From Octopus sinensis (taxonomy: Eukaryota), in NCBI RefSeq assembly GCF_006345805.1, contig NW_021834641.1:1-48129 (forward strand): a stretch of 48,129 nucleotides of DNA. The letters are read 5' to 3'. The notes under the pieces are model-generated. The model searched no databases and was not told where the DNA came from. It was given only the letters and a program-made list of their open reading frames with translations. The translations under genes were made by a program, and so were the position numbers. Positions 1,989-42,133 of this stretch are shown piece by piece. Position 1 is the first letter of the stretch; each line of letters opens with the position of its first letter.

Positions 1989-3620
1989 CATACACAATGC
2001 AGCAACCGTTTTTCTAAAGCTAGCACTTTTTTATTCTCTAGCTAATGTTTTATTATTCTGTAACTAACACTCGTTCTTTTTACCAAGCATTTGTTAGCTC
2101 TCGAGCTAAAATTCCCTTTACTCCAGCTAATACATTTTGCTCTCTAGCTAACAATAATTCTCTTGTTCATTAACGGACATTCTTGAAGCTCTAGCTAAAA
2201 GATATCGTTCTCAAGCTCAGTGACTCTCAAATGGGCAAAAAACACCTAGTCCCTTGTCCACCCCCAGAAACATATAAATAAAAATGTTTGCCTTCCATCC
2301 TTCTTTATTAATGAGCAAGCCAATTAGATTTTACATCTGTTTAATTCTTCTAACTTTTCTATAATGTTGGACAAATTTTAAAATGCTTAAGCGAATCACT
2401 TTTTATTAAAGATAGCATTTTATCCATCACCACTCCCTAAGCTTTGCAGCCACCAGTATTGTTTGTTCTCTCTCTAGCGAATGTCGATTGTTTTAATAAC
2501 ATTAATTGTTCTGTTTTTGTCTTGTAGCTAATATTGTTATTTGTTGCATGCTGGCTAACATTTTTGATCTCTAACAGTCGTTGATCCCTAACTAAAATTT
2601 ATTGATCTGTAACCAATATTCCCTGTTTTCAAGCTAGCATTCTTTTTTCTGAAGCTAACATTATTTTTTAAATATTTTCTTGCTAATTTTTGTTCTCTTG
2701 CAACAATTTATTGGTTTTTGTTTAACATTTCAACAACTGTATTTTTTAAGTGACGCTTGTTTTTTACTATCTAATATCTCTTGGTCTCTAGCTAATATTC
2801 TTTGCTCCCTAGCAAATATAACTTGCTCTCGAGTTAAAATTTCCAGTACTGCAGCTAACATCATTACACGCTTCTTGCTGTCATTCTTGGTCTCAAGCTA
2901 ATAGTTGTTGTCTTACAACAGACAATAACTCTTCCCTGTTTCACAAATATTACCTTCTAGCTAATATTTCTTATTCCCTTCTTCGAATTCGTATTTCTTA
3001 AACTCTAGTTGTTCTTTACGTGATATTTTTGGCATTCTAACATTTTTTATTCGGTATCTGAATAACTTTTCTTTCGGCCTCCTATCTAACATTCATGCAC
3101 CTCTAGCAAAAGTTGCTGTATTTTACTTTAATATTTTTGTTCCAACTTATTGCTCTTTATTTGCTAATTATTTTCCATTATTTTTTTTCTTTCACTGGCG
3201 CTTGTTTGTCTTTCAGTAATATCTCTTGGTCTCCAGCTAATACTTGTTGTTCCCAAGCTAATATTACTTGCTCTTTAGTTAAATTTTCCTACCCTGTAGG
3301 TATCACTATTACACACGTCTTGCTGTTGTCCTTGGAATCCAGCTAACATTTGATACCCTTGAACAGTTTTTATTTTTCCACAAACATTCATCCTTTTCTA
3401 GCTGATATTATTTGTATCCTAACTTTTTTATTTCTAAAACTAATCATTTTTCGACCTCTAACTAAAATTCATTGACCTGTAGCTAAAATTTGTTATTCTC
3501 AGGGCAACTTCTTCACAAACTAGCTTTCTTCTTCTTTCGATAACGTCTGCTGTACTCTACCCAACGTTTTGGTTTGCCACGCTAAAATCTATTGTTTATT
3601 CCTAATATCTATTATTTTGT

Positions 3621-3956
3621 GAAGGCGCATGGCTCAGTGGTTAGAGCGTCAAGCTTACGATCGTGAAGTTGTGAGATCGAATCCTGGACCGGGCTGCGTG
3701 TTGTGTTCTTGAGCAAGACACTTTATTTCACGTTGCTCCAGTTCACTCAGCTGTAGAAATGAGTTGCGACGTCTCAGGTGCAAAGCTGTATCGGCCCCTT
3801 TGCCTTTCCCTTGGATAACGCTGGTGGCGTGGAGAGGCGAGGCCTGTATGCATGGGCAACTGCTGGTCTTCCATAAACAATCTTGCTCAGACTTGTGCGT
3901 GGGAGGGTAAATTTCTAGGTGCAAGCCCGCGGTCAGTCATGACCGAAGGGGGTCCC
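3621..3956 (+). mobile_element. tRNA-derived SINE, family G
   Basis: A box TGGCTCAGTGG, B-box-like GATCGAATCC and central domain TGTGTTCTTGAGCAAGACACT. A second copy lies at 20776-21111 on the opposite strand. Confidence 0.9.
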
Positions 3957-4601
3957 AATATTATTCTGTATTATTTTTCCCTTTAATTGACGCTCTTTGT
4001 TGTTCTTCTAATATTCCTTGGCCTCTCGCTAATGTTTGCTACTACTTAGCTAATATTATTTGCTCTCTAGCTACAAATTCCTGTACACTGACTATCATTG
4101 TTTCGTTCCCGTTTGTCATTTCTTGTTATCCTTCAAACTGCATTGATCCTTCTGTTGCTAATATTTCTTATCCTTCAGCTGACATTGATCATACTTTGCC
4201 TAATATTCCTTATTCCCTCTCTCATATTTTTGCTTGCTAGATTCTAGTTGCTCTCTAGCAAACATTTTTGTATTCTAAATTTTTATTAAAAATTCAATAG
4301 CTAATATTTTCTTTTTTGTCGCCAATTAACGTTCGTTGACTTCAAGCTAAATTGTGTTGTTTTCTGGATAATTTTCATCACTAGCTAACGTTTTTCGTCT
4401 TTTCTCGTTAACATTTGCTATAGTCCAATTATTTTTTTTTTCCTGTCAAGCTAATCTTAATTGTCTTTCCACTGTTATTCACTAGTTTTTCTTTTGTTTT
4501 CCTCTCTTTAATAGCTGTACTTCACTGGCTAACATTTGTTGTTCTTTAACAAATACACATCTTTTTCTAGATAACATATTTTGTCCTCAAATTAACATTC
4601 A

Positions 4602-14375: not shown

Positions 14376-14492
14376 CAAACAAACAAACTTTGGCATAAGC
14401 TCACATAAATTTGCTATAAAAGAAGACACTTGCTCAAGGTGTCACACTGTTGGATTGAACCCGAAACCATTTCGTTGCAATGCGTGATTCTT

Positions 14493-14718
14493 TTATAAAG
14501 AAACACAGATCTGTATTTATGAGATGAGGAATTATGTACATTATTTACATTCGACGGATATTTGTCCTCATCTTGTTTGTTGTTAACACAACGTTTCGGC
14601 TGATATACCCTCCAGCCTTCTTCAGGTGCCTTAGGGAAATTTCGAATCTAGGTTCTCATTCCTAAGGTATTTTTCGATGTTTTAATAATAATAATAATTA
14701 TTATTATTATTATTATTA

Positions 14719-14752
<34 letters not shown>

Positions 14753-14828
14753 GTTGTTGTTGGAATCGAACTCGGAATCTTGGGATTAGGAACCCGCGCT
14801 CTTAACCACCACGCCATATGCCCGTGGG
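14493..14828 (-). mobile_element. tRNA-headed SINE carrying a hammerhead ribozyme motif, with 17-bp TSD
   Basis: TSD TGCAATGCGTG(A/C)TTCTT at 14476-14492 and 14829-14845. A box TGGCGTGGTGG (14816-14806), B box GTTCGATTCC (14771-14762), (AAC/AAT)n spacer, hammerhead at 14630-14585, then a ~95-nt tail. Confidence 0.85.
14585..14630 (-). ncRNA. Minimal type I hammerhead ribozyme motif
   Basis: GGCAC-CUGAAGA-A-GGCUG[GAGGGUAUAU]CAGCC-GAAA-CG-UU-GUGUU. Stem I GGCAC/GUGUU, stem II 5 bp, palindromic ACGU stem III. Predicted cleavage between 14590 and 14589. Confidence 0.75.
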
Positions 14829-15267
14829 TGCAATGCGTGCTTCTTAACCGCTCAGCCATGCTGGCGCCTATATTCAAAGTTTTGAAATTAAACTTTAAAA
14901 TATTGCATTTATAATATTTTTAAATTTCGGGTTCAAATTTCGTTGTAAGTCATCCTCGACTCTCGGATCCTTTAGGACTAGGTTATTCTGCACCCGGGTC
15001 GATTCCGTCGAACTATACACAAGACCCAACCGCCACCAACATCTTTGTTCCTTTGCCCTGTACACTTTTGCGCGAGCTTATGCCAAAGTAAGAAATCATT
15101 ATTTCAGGCAACAAGAGAAACAGCAAGAACAACAAAAAAGAAAACAAAGAAAGAAAAGCGACAACAACAGCAACAACAACAACAAAAATAGCAACAAGCT
15201 ACAAATCATTATCCGGTCCCACGGCCGCCACTTATCGTTATTACCATCAGCGCCCTTGAGTATCCAC

Positions 15268-20745: not shown

Positions 20746-20775
20746 CTCCCGGGTATCTTTATACTCATGTATACT

Positions 20776-21111
20776 GAGACCCTCTTCGGTCATGACTGAC
20801 CGCGGGATAGCACCTATAAAGTTATCCTCCCAAGCACAAGTCTGGGCAAGGTTGTTTATGGAAGACCAGTAGTCACCTATGCATACCAGCCTCCCCTCTC
20901 CACGCCACCAGTTTTATCCAAGGCAAAGGCAAAGGCCGATACAGCTTAGCACCTGTGACGTCACAACTCATTTCTAAAGTTGAGTGAACTGGAGCAAGGT
21001 CAAATAAAGTGCCTTGCTCAAGAACACAACACGCAGCCCGGTCTGGGATTCGAACTCACAACCTAACGATCGTAAGCTCGACGCTCTAACCACTGAGCCA
21101 TGTGCCTTCAC
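20776..21111 (-). mobile_element. tRNA-derived SINE, family G
   Basis: Full-length reverse-complement match to 3621-3956; B box GTTCGAATCC. Confidence 0.92.
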
Positions 21112-21153
21112 CAATGAATAAGATAATTATTATTGTTCCTTTGGTCCTGTTTT

Positions 21154-28328: not shown

Positions 28329-28511
28329 GCTGTTGCTGTTACTACTCTACCATGGAATCCCGAGTACGCAGCCTTGATCAAGTAGATCTAGCCACCCCAG
28401 CTTTTATTTTATATTTTCCCATGCGTAGACTGCCAAAAATTGTATTATCCAAAGCGCCCCATTAATTTTCTGTTCTTAGATATATTAAAAATAAAAATAA
28501 TAAATGCGCCC

Positions 28512-28751
28512 TTTTAAAGCCTAGCTAGGCTCATGGGCCCAGTTTCCCGGTTTTTATAGCGTATGCGTTCCCTAGCTGGACGGGACGCCAGTCCATCGCA
28601 GCGTTACTCATTTTTGCTATCTGAGTGGACTGGAGCAACGTGAAATGAAGTGTTTTGCTCAAGAACACAACGCGTCGCCCGGTCCAGAAATCGAAACCAC
28701 AATCTTACGATCATTATGCTGACACCCTAGCCACTAAGCCACGCGCCTCCA
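28512..28751 (-). mobile_element. tRNA-derived SINE family D
   Basis: Reverse complement TGGAGGCGCGTGGCTTAGTGGCTAGGG..GGTTTCGATTTCTGGACCGGGCGACGCGTTGTGTTCTTGAGCAAAACAC..; tail CGTCCCGTCCAG. Confidence 0.88.
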
Positions 28752-29395
28752 TTCTTTGATATATTAGAAATTGCTATTTTTAGCAAGATTAATCAAATCA
28801 TAATGAAGAGAATTTTTATGAAAACCGGGAAAATGTGTTTGGTTTCCAAGATGCCTGATGTACACTCGTGTGTTGATTCATATGTTATTTTATCTCAGGA
28901 AGATCACTGTGCCAATACTAGGTACGCACAATCTTTCACTTTTGCCGAACTACTAACTTACAGGACGTACATAAACCGGCACCGGTTGTCAAGCAGTGGG
29001 GAGGAGATAAACACAGATATACAGACACAAACAAACACACAGACACACACACACACACATACACGCACCATATATATATATATATATATATATATGCTAT
29101 ATATTTCATATAATAAAACATTTATATATATATATATATATATTATGTAGTAAATACACACGTACGTACATAACAAATACACACAAATTCACAAGCACAA
29201 TGGTTAACATACGCACACTGAGACAATATCAAAAATTAGAAATGATTGCATATATACGCATTTAAAAAAATAATACGCACGCAATCTCTCAATGCAAAAA
29301 AGGGGAAAAAATGCTATTGACATTCAAATATCTCCACTGAAATGCATCACTTCTTAAATCGAAATTCATCCACAGAGAAAACAAGACAAACAGAA

Positions 29396-31210: not shown

Positions 31211-31439
31211 ATACATATACATGCCTGTGTGTGTGTACGTGCACGCGCGCTTGTCTTTTAGTTGTTTCACTCATTACGCATTGGCCGTGTTGGTGTCCTG
31301 CGTGCATGAATTTCAGTCAAACAAATCAAATCCACAACTGTTTTTTAAAGCTTTATAAGCTACACCGCTGATTGACAGGGACTTAAGCAAGTCAGCACTA
31401 GTTGCGAAGTGGTGTTGACGGACAATCACAGACATATGA

Positions 31440-31828
31440 TGGAAGCACTCCGTCGGTTACGACGACGAGGGTTCCGGTTGATCCGAATCAACGGAACAGC
31501 CTGCTCGTGAAATTAACGTGTAAGTGGCTGAGCACTCCACAGACACGTGCACCCTTAACGTAGTTCTCGGGGATATTTAGCGTGACACAGAGAGTGACAA
31601 GGCCGGCCCCTTGAAATACAGGTACAAGAGAAACAGGAAGTAAGAGTGAGAGAAAGTTTGAGGTGAAAGAGTACAGCAGGGATCACCACCATCCCCTGCC
31701 GGAGCCTCGTGGAACTTTTTTTAGGTGTTTTCGCTCAATAAACACTCACAACGCCCGGTCTGGGAATCGAAACCACGATCCTATGACCGCGAGACCGCTG
31801 CCCTAACCACTGGGCCATTGCGCCTCCA
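31440..31828 (-). mobile_element. tRNA-derived SINE family C, full length, TSD CACAGACATAT
   Basis: A box TGGCCCAGTGG, B box GTTTCGATTCC; CACAGACATAT on both flanks (~31427-31437 and 31830-31840). Confidence 0.95.
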
Positions 31829-32585: not shown

Positions 32586-32969
32586 GAGTCGCAATGGTCC
32601 AGTGGTTAGGGCATCGGACTCGCGGTCATAGGATCGCGGTTTCGATTCCCAGACCGGGCGTTGTGAGTGTTTATTGAGCGAAAACACCTAAAGTTCCACG
32701 AGGCTCCGGCAGGGGATGGTGGCGATCCCTGCTGTACTCTTTCACCACAACCTTCTCTCACTCTTACTTCCTGTTTTTGTTGTACCTCTATTTCAAAGGG
32801 CCGGCCTTGTCACTCTCTGTGTCACGCTGAAAATCCCCGAGAACTACGTTAAGGGTACACGTGACTGTGGAGTGCTCAGCCACTTAAACGTTAATTTCAC
32901 GAGCAGGCTGTTCCGTTGATTCGGATCAACCGGAACCCTCATCGTCGTAACCGACGGAGTGCTTCCATC
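32586..32969 (+). mobile_element. tRNA-derived SINE family C, full length, 12-bp TSD
   Basis: TSD AAATACTATCTG at 32574-32585 and 32970-32981; A and B boxes present. Confidence 0.95.
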
Positions 32970-33464
32970 AAATACTATCTGTAATTCTGTATTGACTCGA
33001 ATGAGAAAATGTGTCTCTCAAGAAAGACTTCACTTTGAACAATTTCCACGATGTTTCATATTTAGATGTTGCTGTTGTTGTTGTTGTTTGTTCCTTCTCG
33101 AGCCATGCCTGGCTCAGAAAGGGCCGATTTCCCGGTTTCATTGGTGTATAGGGTCACCCACCTGTCGCATCATATTTAAATGCTTTTATTAAATTTGTTC
33201 CATGGTTTATTTATTAAACATAAATAAACCTTGGAATTAGATGGTTTTGATTTAGTGTCAGGTGATTTTAGCCGTCCTTGTACAAACATACACACGTACA
33301 TATATATATATATCTATATATATTATATATATACATACATACATATATATATATATATTATATATATATATATATATATCTATATATATTATATATATAC
33401 ATACATATATGTATATATGGTGTATATGTATATATATATTATATATATATATATGGTGTATATG

Positions 33465-39633: not shown

Positions 39634-40384
39634 TCATACTGTACACTTCGATTAATATGTGGTGTGTATGTGTTTGTGTGTGTGTGTTTAAAGGGCTTCT
39701 TTTCTCCATGCTTAAGATATGATACACTGGTTTCTCGACTCCTTGTTTGGTACCTAATACACTTGCACTTTTGCCCTCCCTCATTTCTACATTGCTTCAA
39801 GACACAGATTTCACAGTCGTTATCTACACCGCCATGAGTTATGGTACTCAAAAATATGTCATTTTCTATTAGCAAGATATTAAGAACTGATTAATAAATA
39901 ATTAGAAATAACTATATATTTAATATTAATTAACTCACAGTATGCCCATTCAAGTGATTTGTTAATAATAGTTACTCTGCAATTAATTTTAGTCGTAATT
40001 ACTATCGATTCACATTCTGCTAAAAAAATTGAAATTAGAAATTAAAATAATAAATAATTAAATAAAAAGCCGTTAGTTAAAGTTTTAAGTAACATTTAAT
40101 TAACGCGATAATAATTAACTAACTAACATCGGTAGTTTGAAGGTGATCATTTAGTGTCATGATACCGCTAAAAGTAATCGATAGAAGATTCGAAACACCT
40201 GATTAGACAACGAAGGTACCAAAATATCTGAACATATGACAAACCATCAAATGAGTTCCAATGTAGTCACTTAATATACTAGAAATAATAGATAAATAAT
40301 AGATAAATATCTCTAAAATCATACCCTATTGTCTTAAAATGATATAACACAGAGGAGTAAGAAACGTTTTGCACAGCCGTTTTG

Positions 40385-40914
40385 ATGCCACCACTTTCCC
40401 GGTTTCCATGGCGTATGTATTCCCCCGCCTGCACGGGACGCCGGTCCGTTGTGGGATTACTCGTTTTAGCCAGCTGATTGGACTGGAGCAATTTGAAGTG
40501 AAGCGTTCTGATCAAGAACACGACGCGTCGTTATTTTTCGTCACTACCTCCCCGTGCCGGGAGTGGGTAAATTGCGCGCCTGCTGTCTTCTTTAAATGTG
40601 GTAGCCGTTTCGCATGCTCCCTATCAGGAATCGAACCCTGATTACTCGTTACCCGTTGCCACCACGGTCGGCACTTACCGGGCCGTCGACAGGTGATAGG
40701 GCGGAACTCGCGGGGGACCCGTCGCGCGAAGGCTAGATCGTACTAACACTTATCCAGAGTCATCAAAATCGAAAGGTGTGAAGCCGCTGCACGCGTCGAC
40801 CCGCGCGCGGATCGCGGTGGCTGCTGCGACGTCCAGTACGCGTCGGCCTTAGTCTAATATTTGCGCCGCGACCAATGCGGAAGGCCGACCGAATCACTAA
40901 GCTACGCGCCTCCA
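40385..40914 (-). mobile_element. SINE family D chimera containing an 18S rRNA segment
   Basis: Head TGGAGGCGCGTAGCTTAGTG (40914-~40890); centre and tail GACGCGTCGTGTTCTTGATCAGAACGCTTCACTTCAAATTGCTCCAGTCC.. (40529-40385) match 28512-28751. Confidence 0.85.
40530..40885 (-). pseudogene. Decayed 18S rRNA fragment (V2-V3 region)
   Basis: Reverse complement contains TTAGACTAAG, TTGATGACTCTGGATAA, GCCCTATCA.CTGTCGA, AATCAGGGTTCGATTCC, GAAACGGCTACCACAT, CAGCAGGCGCGCAA.TTACCCACTCCCGGCACGGGGAGGTAGTGACGAAAAATAAC in 18S order. Several normally invariant bases are mutated. Confidence 0.95.
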
Positions 40915-41194
40915 CTACTTTAAACTACGGGAAAAGAACCAAGAACAACATTATTCAATGGGTCCTATTGTAAGAAAGCAGAGACGGGATTTGAAGGACA
41001 CATGCCTGCTTTATCTAGCTGAACAAGCGTCTAAATAGTATCTCCCATATTTGCTCGAAATATGCGCTATTTATATACCATGCATTGATTCCATTTAATC
41101 GACCTTTATATATGTGACATAATGTCAATGTTAGGAATCAATGTCTGTATTAGGGATGTGGATTAACTAAAGAGAAACAGCAGTGGTGGTGGTG

Positions 41195-41237
<43 letters not shown>

Positions 41238-41314
41238 AAGCAGCAGCAACAGCAGCAGTCGTAGTAGAAGTGGTGGTAGTAGTAGTAGCAGCAACTGCAG
41301 CAGTAGCAGCAGTC

Positions 41315-41356
<42 letters not shown>

Positions 41357-42133
41357 CCTGAAATGCTTCTGACTAGGAATATCGAAATTTGACCGCTGAA
41401 GGTAATTTTTTTTCAATCTTTTTCTTTTCTTTTCTCTTTTTTTTCTTCTTTTTTTCTCCATACAGGAATCGAACTTTCGACCTGCTGCTTTATACTAAAT
41501 AGTGTAAAGAATTGGCATGCAATGATTTACGATAGACTGACCAGTGGTTTTTCTTTGCAATTGAATATGCCAAGGAAGCTACCTATTCGTCAAGAAAATT
41601 TATTGCGCTGCCAAAATCAGAATGAGTTTTTCCTCTCAGAATTCTTGAAATATTGAGTTTTCTAATAATAGCCTAATCTATAATGTCTATAATGTTTGCG
41701 TTCTGTCGAATTTAAAGTTATAATCGGCATATTTTGGACAAGAGAGAAATGCCAGCTTTGACACTTGCTGGTTTCCTACAAATGTACAACACTTCCTCGT
41801 GCGGCTTCCTTTACTAAACAATGGACGCCATTATTCTTCAATTTCCACATGATAGCAGGTGGTGTATGTGTGGTGTGTGTGTGTGTACGTGCGTGCAAGT
41901 GTGTGTGTGCTTGTGTTGCGTTCATTATGTATTCGAACAGTGACTGATTGATACACAGAGGATCAACGGGAGATGATATATAATTAACTCTTCCATTGGC
42001 TGTCAGCCAGACATTGTTATTCTTGTTCTCTTCCTTCGTGTTCTTGCTGTCATTGTTGTTGCTGTTGTTGTTGTTGTTGTTGTTGTTGTTTTGCCCCAAC
42101 CCCATCCTGCTTGAGTATACCAACCCTTTATCC

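What the first reader, a model, noticed from the sequence alone, without database searches (positions are those of the whole stretch)
40385..40914. SINE-18S rRNA-SINE chimera
Seen: about 355 bp of 18S (V2-V3, with a GC-rich V2 expansion) sits sense-to-sense inside a family D SINE. It replaces roughly 45 nt from the anticodon arm through the B box. The rRNA supplies its own GGTTCGATTCC, a perfect B-box match, although ~250 bp from the A box. Mutations at invariant rRNA positions show an old genomic copy, not contamination. Inference: either a double template switch (SINE to 18S to SINE) during reverse transcription, or a propagating SINE subfamily with an 18S module. SINE parts derived from 5S and 28S rRNA are known; I know of none from 18S.
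Basis: partly seen in the sequence, partly recalled or inferred. Interest (0 to 1): 0.8.

Follow-up and report, generated by a model that had tools for sequence, protein, structure and literature searches.

The report
One-off SINE with 18S rRNA insert
One old, dead copy of a common octopus-type short mobile element (SINE) has about 50 bases of its front part replaced by a decayed 372-base piece of the animal's own 18S ribosomal RNA. It is a real but single copying or repair accident of a known kind, not a new family of mobile elements.

Summary
The element lies on the minus strand at about 40358-40915. It has three parts:
- A 21-nt SINE head with the A box.
- 372 nt that match nt 343-735 of the host's roughly 2.64-kb 18S rRNA.
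- About 165 nt of SINE body and tail.

SINE nt 20-73, including its B box, are missing. The 3' joint lies in a perfect 7-nt overlap (CGACGCG). The 5' joint lies in a 7-nt patch of partial identity.

The 18S piece has 7% substitutions, biased GC to AT, and four indels against the genome's own 18S copies. It is therefore an old genomic pseudogene fragment, not contamination.

Both junction 30-33-mers, with up to 3 mismatches, occur once in the 2.72-Gb assembly, so no 18S-bearing SINE subfamily propagated. Public contigs from three studies bridge the 5' joint and the SINE-to-flank boundary. None of the listed contigs bridges the 3' joint.

The mechanism is unresolved:
- About 0.5: a double template jump by a reverse transcriptase (SINE RNA to 18S rRNA and back).
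- About 0.35: microhomology-guided repair of an existing SINE copy with 18S as filler.

Both are known kinds of event. This scan already noted several other rRNA-SINE chimeras on other DNA of this genome, three of them also 18S pieces inside SINEs. I could not verify those notes.

The parts
40895..40915 (-). SINE head: GT plus consensus nt 1-19 (GGAGGCGCGTAGCTTAGTG). It starts exactly at the family's 5' end and includes the A box TAGCTTAGTGA (40904-40894).
   Evidence: 1 mismatch to the family 5' end, with 0 matches expected by chance. Compared with the consensus of 29 genome copies. Coordinates.
40889..40895 (-). 5' joint patch GATTCGG. The 18S reads GATACGG and the SINE reads GGTTAGG (GATTAGG in copy L056), so the crossover lies within 7 nt of partial identity with 1-3 nt of exact overlap.
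   Evidence: Alignments.
40524..40895 (-). 372-nt decayed copy of host 18S rRNA nt 343-735 (V2 expansion to the conserved core before V3), in the same sense as the SINE.
   Evidence: Rfam RF01960, 113 bits. 86-88% identical to about 20 dispersed 18S loci. 93.0% substitution identity with GC to AT bias and 4 indels. 18S numbering.
40627..40637 (-). GGTTCGATTCC, a conserved 18S motif that happens to match the Pol III B-box consensus. It lies about 257 nt downstream of the SINE A box.
   Evidence: No evidence of function, since the locus is single-copy.
40524..40530 (-). 3' joint: perfect 7-nt microhomology CGACGCG, shared by 18S nt 729-735 and SINE consensus nt 74-80.
40358..40523 (-). SINE body and tail (consensus nt 81 to about 260). 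Similarity is clear down to 40391. From 40390 to about 40358 it is a weakly alignable, decayed A/T-rich tail.
   Evidence: Other genome copies stop matching at about 40385-40390.
28487..28751 (-). Intact reference copy of the same SINE family in this window, flanked by the 14-nt target-site duplication AATATATC[A/T]AAGAA (28752-28765 and 28473-28486).
   Evidence: More than 5,000 candidate copies in the genome.

Best explanation
This is a single, old, non-functional chimeric retrocopy made in one retroposition event.

Inferred sequence of events: a LINE-encoded reverse transcriptase primed on the 3' tail of a SINE RNA and copied it up to the boundary between body and tRNA-like head (nt 74-80). 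The nascent cDNA end, the complement of CGACGCG, re-paired with the identical heptamer at nt 729-735 of 18S rRNA. Synthesis continued along the rRNA to nt 343. The cDNA then re-paired through the GAT..GG patch with a SINE RNA just behind its A box and ran off that RNA's 5' end.

The product lost the SINE B box and never amplified. It has since decayed by about 7% in the 18S part.

Shown: the anatomy, the shared orientation, the microhomologies, the single-copy status and the age. Inferred: that the SINE parts were RNA rather than pre-existing DNA when the joints formed.
For: - All three parts have the same sense. RNA-to-RNA template switching requires this.
- The head ends exactly at the SINE family's 5' end, as expected when a reverse transcriptase runs off its last template.
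- The 3' joint has a perfect 7-nt overlap, about 6e-5 by chance at a fixed joint. The 5' joint lies in a 7-nt similar patch.
- There is no poly-A and no duplication around the 18S piece, so it was not a separate standard insertion.
- The SINE and 18S parts have compatible decay. The 18S shows 7.0%. The SINE shows about 9-13% once CpG-retaining older-subfamily sites are set aside.
- Double template jumps that give tripartite retro-chimeras are documented (PMC2104539). Sense-oriented 28S rRNA/LINE-1 chimeras of 50-482 nt are documented in primates (bioRxiv 10.1101/2025.02.02.635956).
- Unverified notes of this scan list many TSD-flanked rRNA-SINE chimeras in this same genome.
Against: - Nothing in the locus shows that the SINE parts were RNA at the time. 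A pre-existing SINE copy broken between nt 20 and 73 and repaired with an 18S filler gives the same structure, and the collinearity of the two SINE parts then comes for free.
- A return to a SINE RNA upstream of the point of departure needs a second specific jump.
- No unambiguous target-site duplication flanks the whole element.
- The SINE tail looks somewhat more diverged than the 18S piece: 17 private differences in 135 sites against 26 in 371. That could mean the SINE is older than the insert.
- My two exact-pattern searches for simple 18S-SINE fusions elsewhere in the genome found nothing.
Confidence: 0.5

Rival explanations
1. A pre-existing genomic SINE copy suffered a break between nt 20 and 73. 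It was repaired by microhomology-mediated joining or templated synthesis, using an 18S rDNA fragment, an 18S cDNA or 18S rRNA itself as filler, with loss of about 54 bp of the SINE.
For: Microhomology at both joints and deletion of recipient sequence are the classic scars of such repair. The collinearity and shared orientation of the two SINE parts need no extra assumption. The SINE tail is nominally more diverged than the 18S piece. SINE copies are very abundant targets, with more than 5,000 candidates. 18S copies and fragments are dispersed over many chromosomes as possible donors.
Against: The sense orientation of the filler is only a 1-in-2 outcome here, whereas template switching requires it. 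A 372-nt filler is long for polymerase-theta-type templated insertions (my own knowledge, not tested). Scan notes report at least three more 18S pieces inside SINEs. One is described as sense; the notes give no orientation for the other two. They also report many TSD-flanked rRNA-SINE fusions that need reverse transcription (unverified).
Confidence: 0.35
2. It is one copy of a propagating SINE subfamily that carries an 18S module and uses the rRNA's own GGTTCGATTCC as its B box.
For: The A box is kept and a perfect B-box-like motif lies in the insert. SINEs with 5S- and 28S-derived parts exist (PMC10946416; PMC4994717).
Against: Both junctions are unique in the 2.72-Gb assembly at up to 3 mismatches in 30-33 nt and in 70-mer BLAST searches. 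No other hit of the full query crosses a joint. The A-to-B spacing of about 257 nt is far from that of the parent SINE, about 40 nt.
Confidence: 0.03
3. The structure is an assembly artefact or contamination: a false join of SINE reads and rRNA reads on a small unplaced contig.
For: The window is an entire 48-kb unplaced contig. None of the listed public contigs bridges the 3' joint at 40524-40530.
Against: The 18S piece differs from the genome's 18S by 7% substitutions plus indels, so it cannot come from rRNA or rDNA reads. Contigs from runs X2 and X3 (0 differences) and X5 (another study, 12 differences in 426 nt) bridge the 5' joint. X1-X3 bridge the SINE 3' end into unique flank. An exact 135-nt contig of the decayed 18S piece exists in X1. 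All are at single-copy depth. A 7-nt overlap is too short to mislead a long-read assembler.
Confidence: 0.04

Closest known systems
Tripartite chimeric retroelements from double template jumps during LINE reverse transcription (Gogvadze et al. 2007, PMC2104539; human and Magnaporthe examples)
   Same: Three RNA-derived parts are fused directly in one orientation, the 3' part is a LINE-dependent retroelement, and each is a single dead copy.
   Different: Here the first and third parts come from the same SINE family and are collinear, so the result looks like an insertion inside a SINE. The fungal example has a perfect 14-bp TSD. Here none can be recognised.
[quoted passage not shown]
   Same: Internal rRNA fragments of a few hundred nt (median 269, range 50-482), mostly in sense orientation, are fused to a retroelement.
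   Different: Those chimeras are bipartite, the partner is L1 rather than a SINE, and the rRNA is 28S. That paper does not mention 18S at all (0 occurrences).
rRNA-derived SINE families: SINE3 and other 5S-headed SINEs, and SINE28 (Longo et al. 2015, PMC4994717; table in PMC10946416)
   Same: rRNA-derived sequence sits inside a SINE-like unit.
   Different: Those are amplified families with many copies. This one is a single copy with a disrupted promoter.
Filler-DNA or templated insertions at microhomology-mediated break repair
   Same: Microhomology at both joints, loss of recipient bases, and an unrelated cellular sequence as insert.
   Different: The insert is long (372 nt) and in sense to the SINE. 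Whether repair or retroposition made it cannot be told from this locus.

Membership tests
Propagating SINE family with an 18S module | Many copies share the same head/18S and 18S/body junctions | tested here: not met
   Junction 70-mers and 30-33-mer patterns with up to 3 mismatches match only this locus in 2.72 Gb.
Propagating SINE family with an 18S module | Internal Pol III promoter with A and B boxes at workable spacing | tested here: inconclusive
   The A box is kept (40904-40894) and the SINE B box is deleted. The 18S-borne GGTTCGATTCC lies about 257 nt away. Transcription was not tested.
Template-switch chimeric retrocopy (Buzdin/Gogvadze type) | Parts are copies of different cellular RNAs joined directly in the same transcriptional sense | tested here: met
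   SINE head, 18S nt 343-735 and SINE body all lie on the minus strand with no linker.
Template-switch chimeric retrocopy (Buzdin/Gogvadze type) | The 3' part is a LINE-mobilised element with its own 3' tail, and the 5' part ends at the 5' end of its RNA | tested here: met
   The tail aligns, decayed, to the family's A/T-rich end at about 40358. The head starts at family nt 1.
Template-switch chimeric retrocopy (Buzdin/Gogvadze type) | One target-site duplication flanks the whole chimera | tested here: inconclusive
   The best candidate, TTTAAAG against TTTTAAG, is no better than chance. The intact family copy at 28487-28751 has a clear 14-nt TSD.
Template-switch chimeric retrocopy (Buzdin/Gogvadze type) | Inserted as one unit: the orthologous site is empty in lineages without it | not testable with these tools
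   No other octopod genome can be reached.
Break repair with filler DNA (microhomology-mediated) | Microhomology at both joints and loss of recipient sequence | tested here: met
   A 7-nt perfect overlap at the 3' joint, 1-3 nt within a 7-nt similar patch at the 5' joint, and SINE nt 20-73 missing.
Break repair with filler DNA (microhomology-mediated) | The recipient SINE existed intact before the insertion | not testable with these tools
   This needs the orthologous locus in outgroup species. Divergence of the SINE part against the 18S part is only weakly suggestive.
Functional 18S rRNA gene | Full-length SSU rRNA with conserved core intact | tested here: not met
   Only 372 nt of about 2,640, with 26 substitutions, some in universally conserved stretches, and a 19-nt deletion.

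The most novel reading that the evidence does not exclude
This locus may be one of several independent SINE-18S-SINE sandwiches in this octopod genome. If so, the LINE reverse transcriptase that moves these SINEs may repeatedly hop onto rRNA and back at the head/body boundary of the SINE RNA. That would imply that SINE RNA is reverse-transcribed in physical contact with ribosomes, and such hops could be the raw material for new composite SINEs, including a first 18S-derived one.
Probability: 0.15. Interest if true: 0.55.

Novelty: new member of a known kind. Interest (0 to 1): 0.3.

Why it matters
On its own this is a molecular fossil with no function. Its value is as a clean, datable example, outside mammals and fungi, of how an abundant cellular RNA gets spliced into a mobile element through short overlaps.

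Taken with the other rRNA-SINE chimeras that this scan noted in the same genome, a census of such joints could show whether octopod LINE reverse transcriptases switch templates unusually often. Orientation, breakpoints and overlap lengths would be the informative features. That process is thought to assemble new SINE families from modules.

Tried and rejected
- **Propagating subfamily.** Rejected by four whole-genome junction searches.
- **Contamination or live rRNA.** Rejected by the 7% GC-to-AT-biased decay and indels.
- **Separate standard retro-insertion of 18S into the SINE.** Rejected. There is no poly-A and no duplication around the piece, and 54 nt are lost instead.
- **Two independent SINE insertions flanking an 18S fragment.** Rejected. 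The left part is only the first 21 nt of a SINE, the opposite of the usual 5' truncation, and the two parts are collinear.
- **TSD search for the whole element.** Nothing better than chance.
- **A SINE subfamily with the chimera's odd 3' end.** Other copies stop matching at about 40385-40390. A decayed standard tail remains alignable by eye.
- **Dating the SINE part against the 18S part to separate the two mechanisms.** Inconclusive. The chimera derives from an older, CpG-richer subfamily that my sample of copies does not represent.
- **Check of this scan's notes on simple 18S-SINE fusions.** Two exact-anchor gap patterns found no hits. Decayed copies would be missed, so this says little.
- **Rfam on 12 loci at once.** The call failed, so I ran single loci instead.
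- **Further loci.** I did not try other routes.

Full report
**What is there**

The window is a complete unplaced 48,129-bp contig of a 2.72-Gb assembly with 13,516 contigs. Its very high microsatellite load and its SINE families fit an octopod. Earlier notes of this scan also call the genome octopus.

Rfam finds one gathering-level RNA match in the whole window, a eukaryotic SSU rRNA fragment on the minus strand at the finding's place (113 bits, E 7.6e-31). ARAGORN finds no tRNA gene.

**Anatomy, read on the minus strand**

I built a consensus of the genome's own 18S from 13 dispersed loci. Against these the element resolves as follows.

- **Head, 40915-40895.** GT plus SINE nt 1-19, with 1 mismatch and 0 matches expected by chance. 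It contains the A box.
- **18S piece, 40895-40524.** This is 18S nt 343-735, counted from the TACCTGGTTGATCC start in L003.
- **Body and tail, 40523 to about 40358.** SINE nt 81 to about 260. It is 85% identical to the consensus down to 40391, followed by a decayed but alignable A/T-rich tail.

SINE nt 20-73 are missing. That span covers the rest of the tRNA-like head, including the B box.

All three parts have the same sense. The intact family copy at 28487-28751 has a clear 14-nt target-site duplication. The family has more than 5,000 candidate copies in the genome.

**The joints**

At the 3' joint, the heptamer CGACGCG (40530-40524) belongs both to 18S nt 729-735 and to SINE nt 74-80. At a fixed joint such an overlap has a chance probability of about 4^-7.

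At the 5' joint the chimera reads GATTCGG. The 18S has GATACGG and the SINE has GGTTAGG, or GATTAGG in copy L056. The crossover therefore lies inside a 7-nt patch of partial identity.

No linker, poly-A or duplication surrounds the 18S piece.

**Age and authenticity**

The 18S piece differs from the genome's 18S consensus by 26 substitutions in 371 aligned sites (93.0% identity). The changes are directional, GC to AT 18 against AT to GC 3. There are four indel events, including a 19-nt deletion. This is the pattern of an old genomic pseudogene, not of rRNA or rDNA contamination.

The SINE tail has 21 differences from the consensus in 135 sites. Five of these are CpG where the consensus has TG or CA. 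The chimera therefore descends from an older, CpG-richer subfamily. Without those sites its decay (about 9-13%) is compatible with that of the 18S piece, or somewhat higher.

**Independent support**

Public contigs were laid on 39800-41500.

- Runs X2 and X3 (two organism labels, two studies) have exact contigs over 40862-41171. These carry 34 nt of the 18S piece, the SINE head and the unique 5' flank.
- Run X5 (a third study) has a 438-nt contig over 40707-41132 with 12 differences, so it comes from a diverged haplotype or close relative that also carries the 5' joint.
- Runs X1-X3 bridge the SINE 3' end into unique flank (39800-40424).
- X1 has an exact 135-nt contig of the decayed 18S piece (40541-40675).
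- All of these lie at single-copy depth.

None of the listed contigs bridges the 3' joint at 40524-40530. Short-read unitigs break in the high-copy SINE body. That joint therefore rests on the assembly alone.

**Copy number**

- The full 546-nt query finds about 20 complete or partial 18S loci and SINE tails, but nothing that crosses a joint.
- 70-mers over each joint match other loci only up to the joint.
- A 30-mer and a 33-mer across the joints, with up to 3 mismatches, occur once in the assembly. The reversed-pattern controls give zero.

The idea of an amplified 18S-bearing SINE subfamily is therefore rejected for this assembly. The B-box-like GGTTCGATTCC (40637-40627) is simply a conserved 18S motif about 257 nt from the A box. 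Nothing suggests that it works.

**Mechanism**

Two known processes fit.

(A) *A double template jump during retroposition.* The reverse transcriptase copies SINE RNA from its tail to nt 74. It then jumps to 18S rRNA through the 7-nt overlap and copies nt 735 down to 343. Finally it jumps back to SINE RNA behind the A box and runs off its 5' end. This reading requires the observed sense-to-sense order, and it explains why the head ends exactly at SINE nt 1. There are precedents:
- Tripartite chimeras in Magnaporthe and mammals (PMC2104539).
- Sense-oriented internal 28S rRNA pieces of 50-482 nt fused to LINE-1 in primates (bioRxiv 10.1101/2025.02.02.635956).

(B) *Repair of an existing SINE copy.* A copy broken between nt 20 and 73 is repaired through microhomology with an 18S DNA, cDNA or RNA filler. 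This explains the collinear SINE parts without a second specific jump, and it fits the 54-nt loss. It does not predict the orientation.

The locus alone cannot separate A from B, and no target-site duplication survives.

Notes of this scan on other DNA of the same genome describe many rRNA-SINE chimeras. Several are TSD-flanked bipartite ones, and three are further 18S pieces inside SINEs. These notes moved my odds modestly towards A, but they are unverified. My two exact-pattern checks for the bipartite types found nothing, which is weak evidence because decayed copies escape exact anchors.

I put A at about 0.5, B at about 0.35, an artefact at about 0.04 and a propagating family at about 0.03.

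**Comparison with what is known**

A 2024 review's table of rDNA-derived parts in transposable elements lists 5S- and 28S-derived SINEs but none from 18S (PMC10946416). A single dead copy is not a SINE family, however.

The finding is a new member of a known kind: a chimeric retrocopy or filler insertion. By my recollection the parent SINE's body resembles the CORE/MIR-type domain reported for the octopus OR2 SINE (cited in PMC4758252). I did not test this.

**Verdict**

The element is a real, old, one-off accident, of modest interest by itself. It is more useful as one data point in a genome-wide census of rRNA-SINE joints in this octopod.

Noticed in passing
Loci L002-L012, L016, L017 (G000 contigs C1, C2, C3, C8, C18, C19, C27, C913, C11589, C12776): Near-complete 18S genes with 96-99% identical upstream spacer are dispersed over at least nine chromosomes-sized contigs rather than lying in one array. 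More diverged partial copies (72-85%) also exist. I did not examine whether these are working rDNA units or dispersed pseudogenes.
   Followed up: partly
L003:2484-2486 (G000:C12776): This 18S copy lacks about 410 nt of genuine 18S core sequence that at least ten other loci carry, so it is an internally deleted rDNA copy. The intact host 18S is unusually long, about 2.64 kb, with GC-rich expansions.
   Followed up: partly
window 40169: Public runs X1, X3 and X5 carry a 20-nt insertion (AAAAGTAATCGATCTTAGAA) behind 40169 that the window and run X2 lack. It is an indel polymorphism in the unique 3' flank.
   Followed up: no
window 14476-14845: Another first-stage note on this window proposes a SINE carrying a hammerhead ribozyme here. 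The whole-window Rfam scan at gathering thresholds reported no hammerhead family, only the SSU fragment.
   Followed up: no
window 31434-31658 and 32749-32973: A 225-nt inverted repeat, 95% complementary, with 1,090 nt between the arms. It may be the ends of a DNA transposon or two young repeats in opposite orientation.
   Followed up: no
window 3610-3961 and 20771-21120: A second tRNA-type SINE family is present in two opposed copies, 87-90% alike. Its head is GAAGGCGCATGGCTCAGTG and it shares the same conserved body motif as family D.
   Followed up: no
18S consensus, nt about 400 (window 40866-40859 in the chimera): The 18S piece contains a second CGACGCGT, an 8-nt match to the SINE's switch site, so the overlap used at the 3' joint is not unique within the rRNA.
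   Followed up: no
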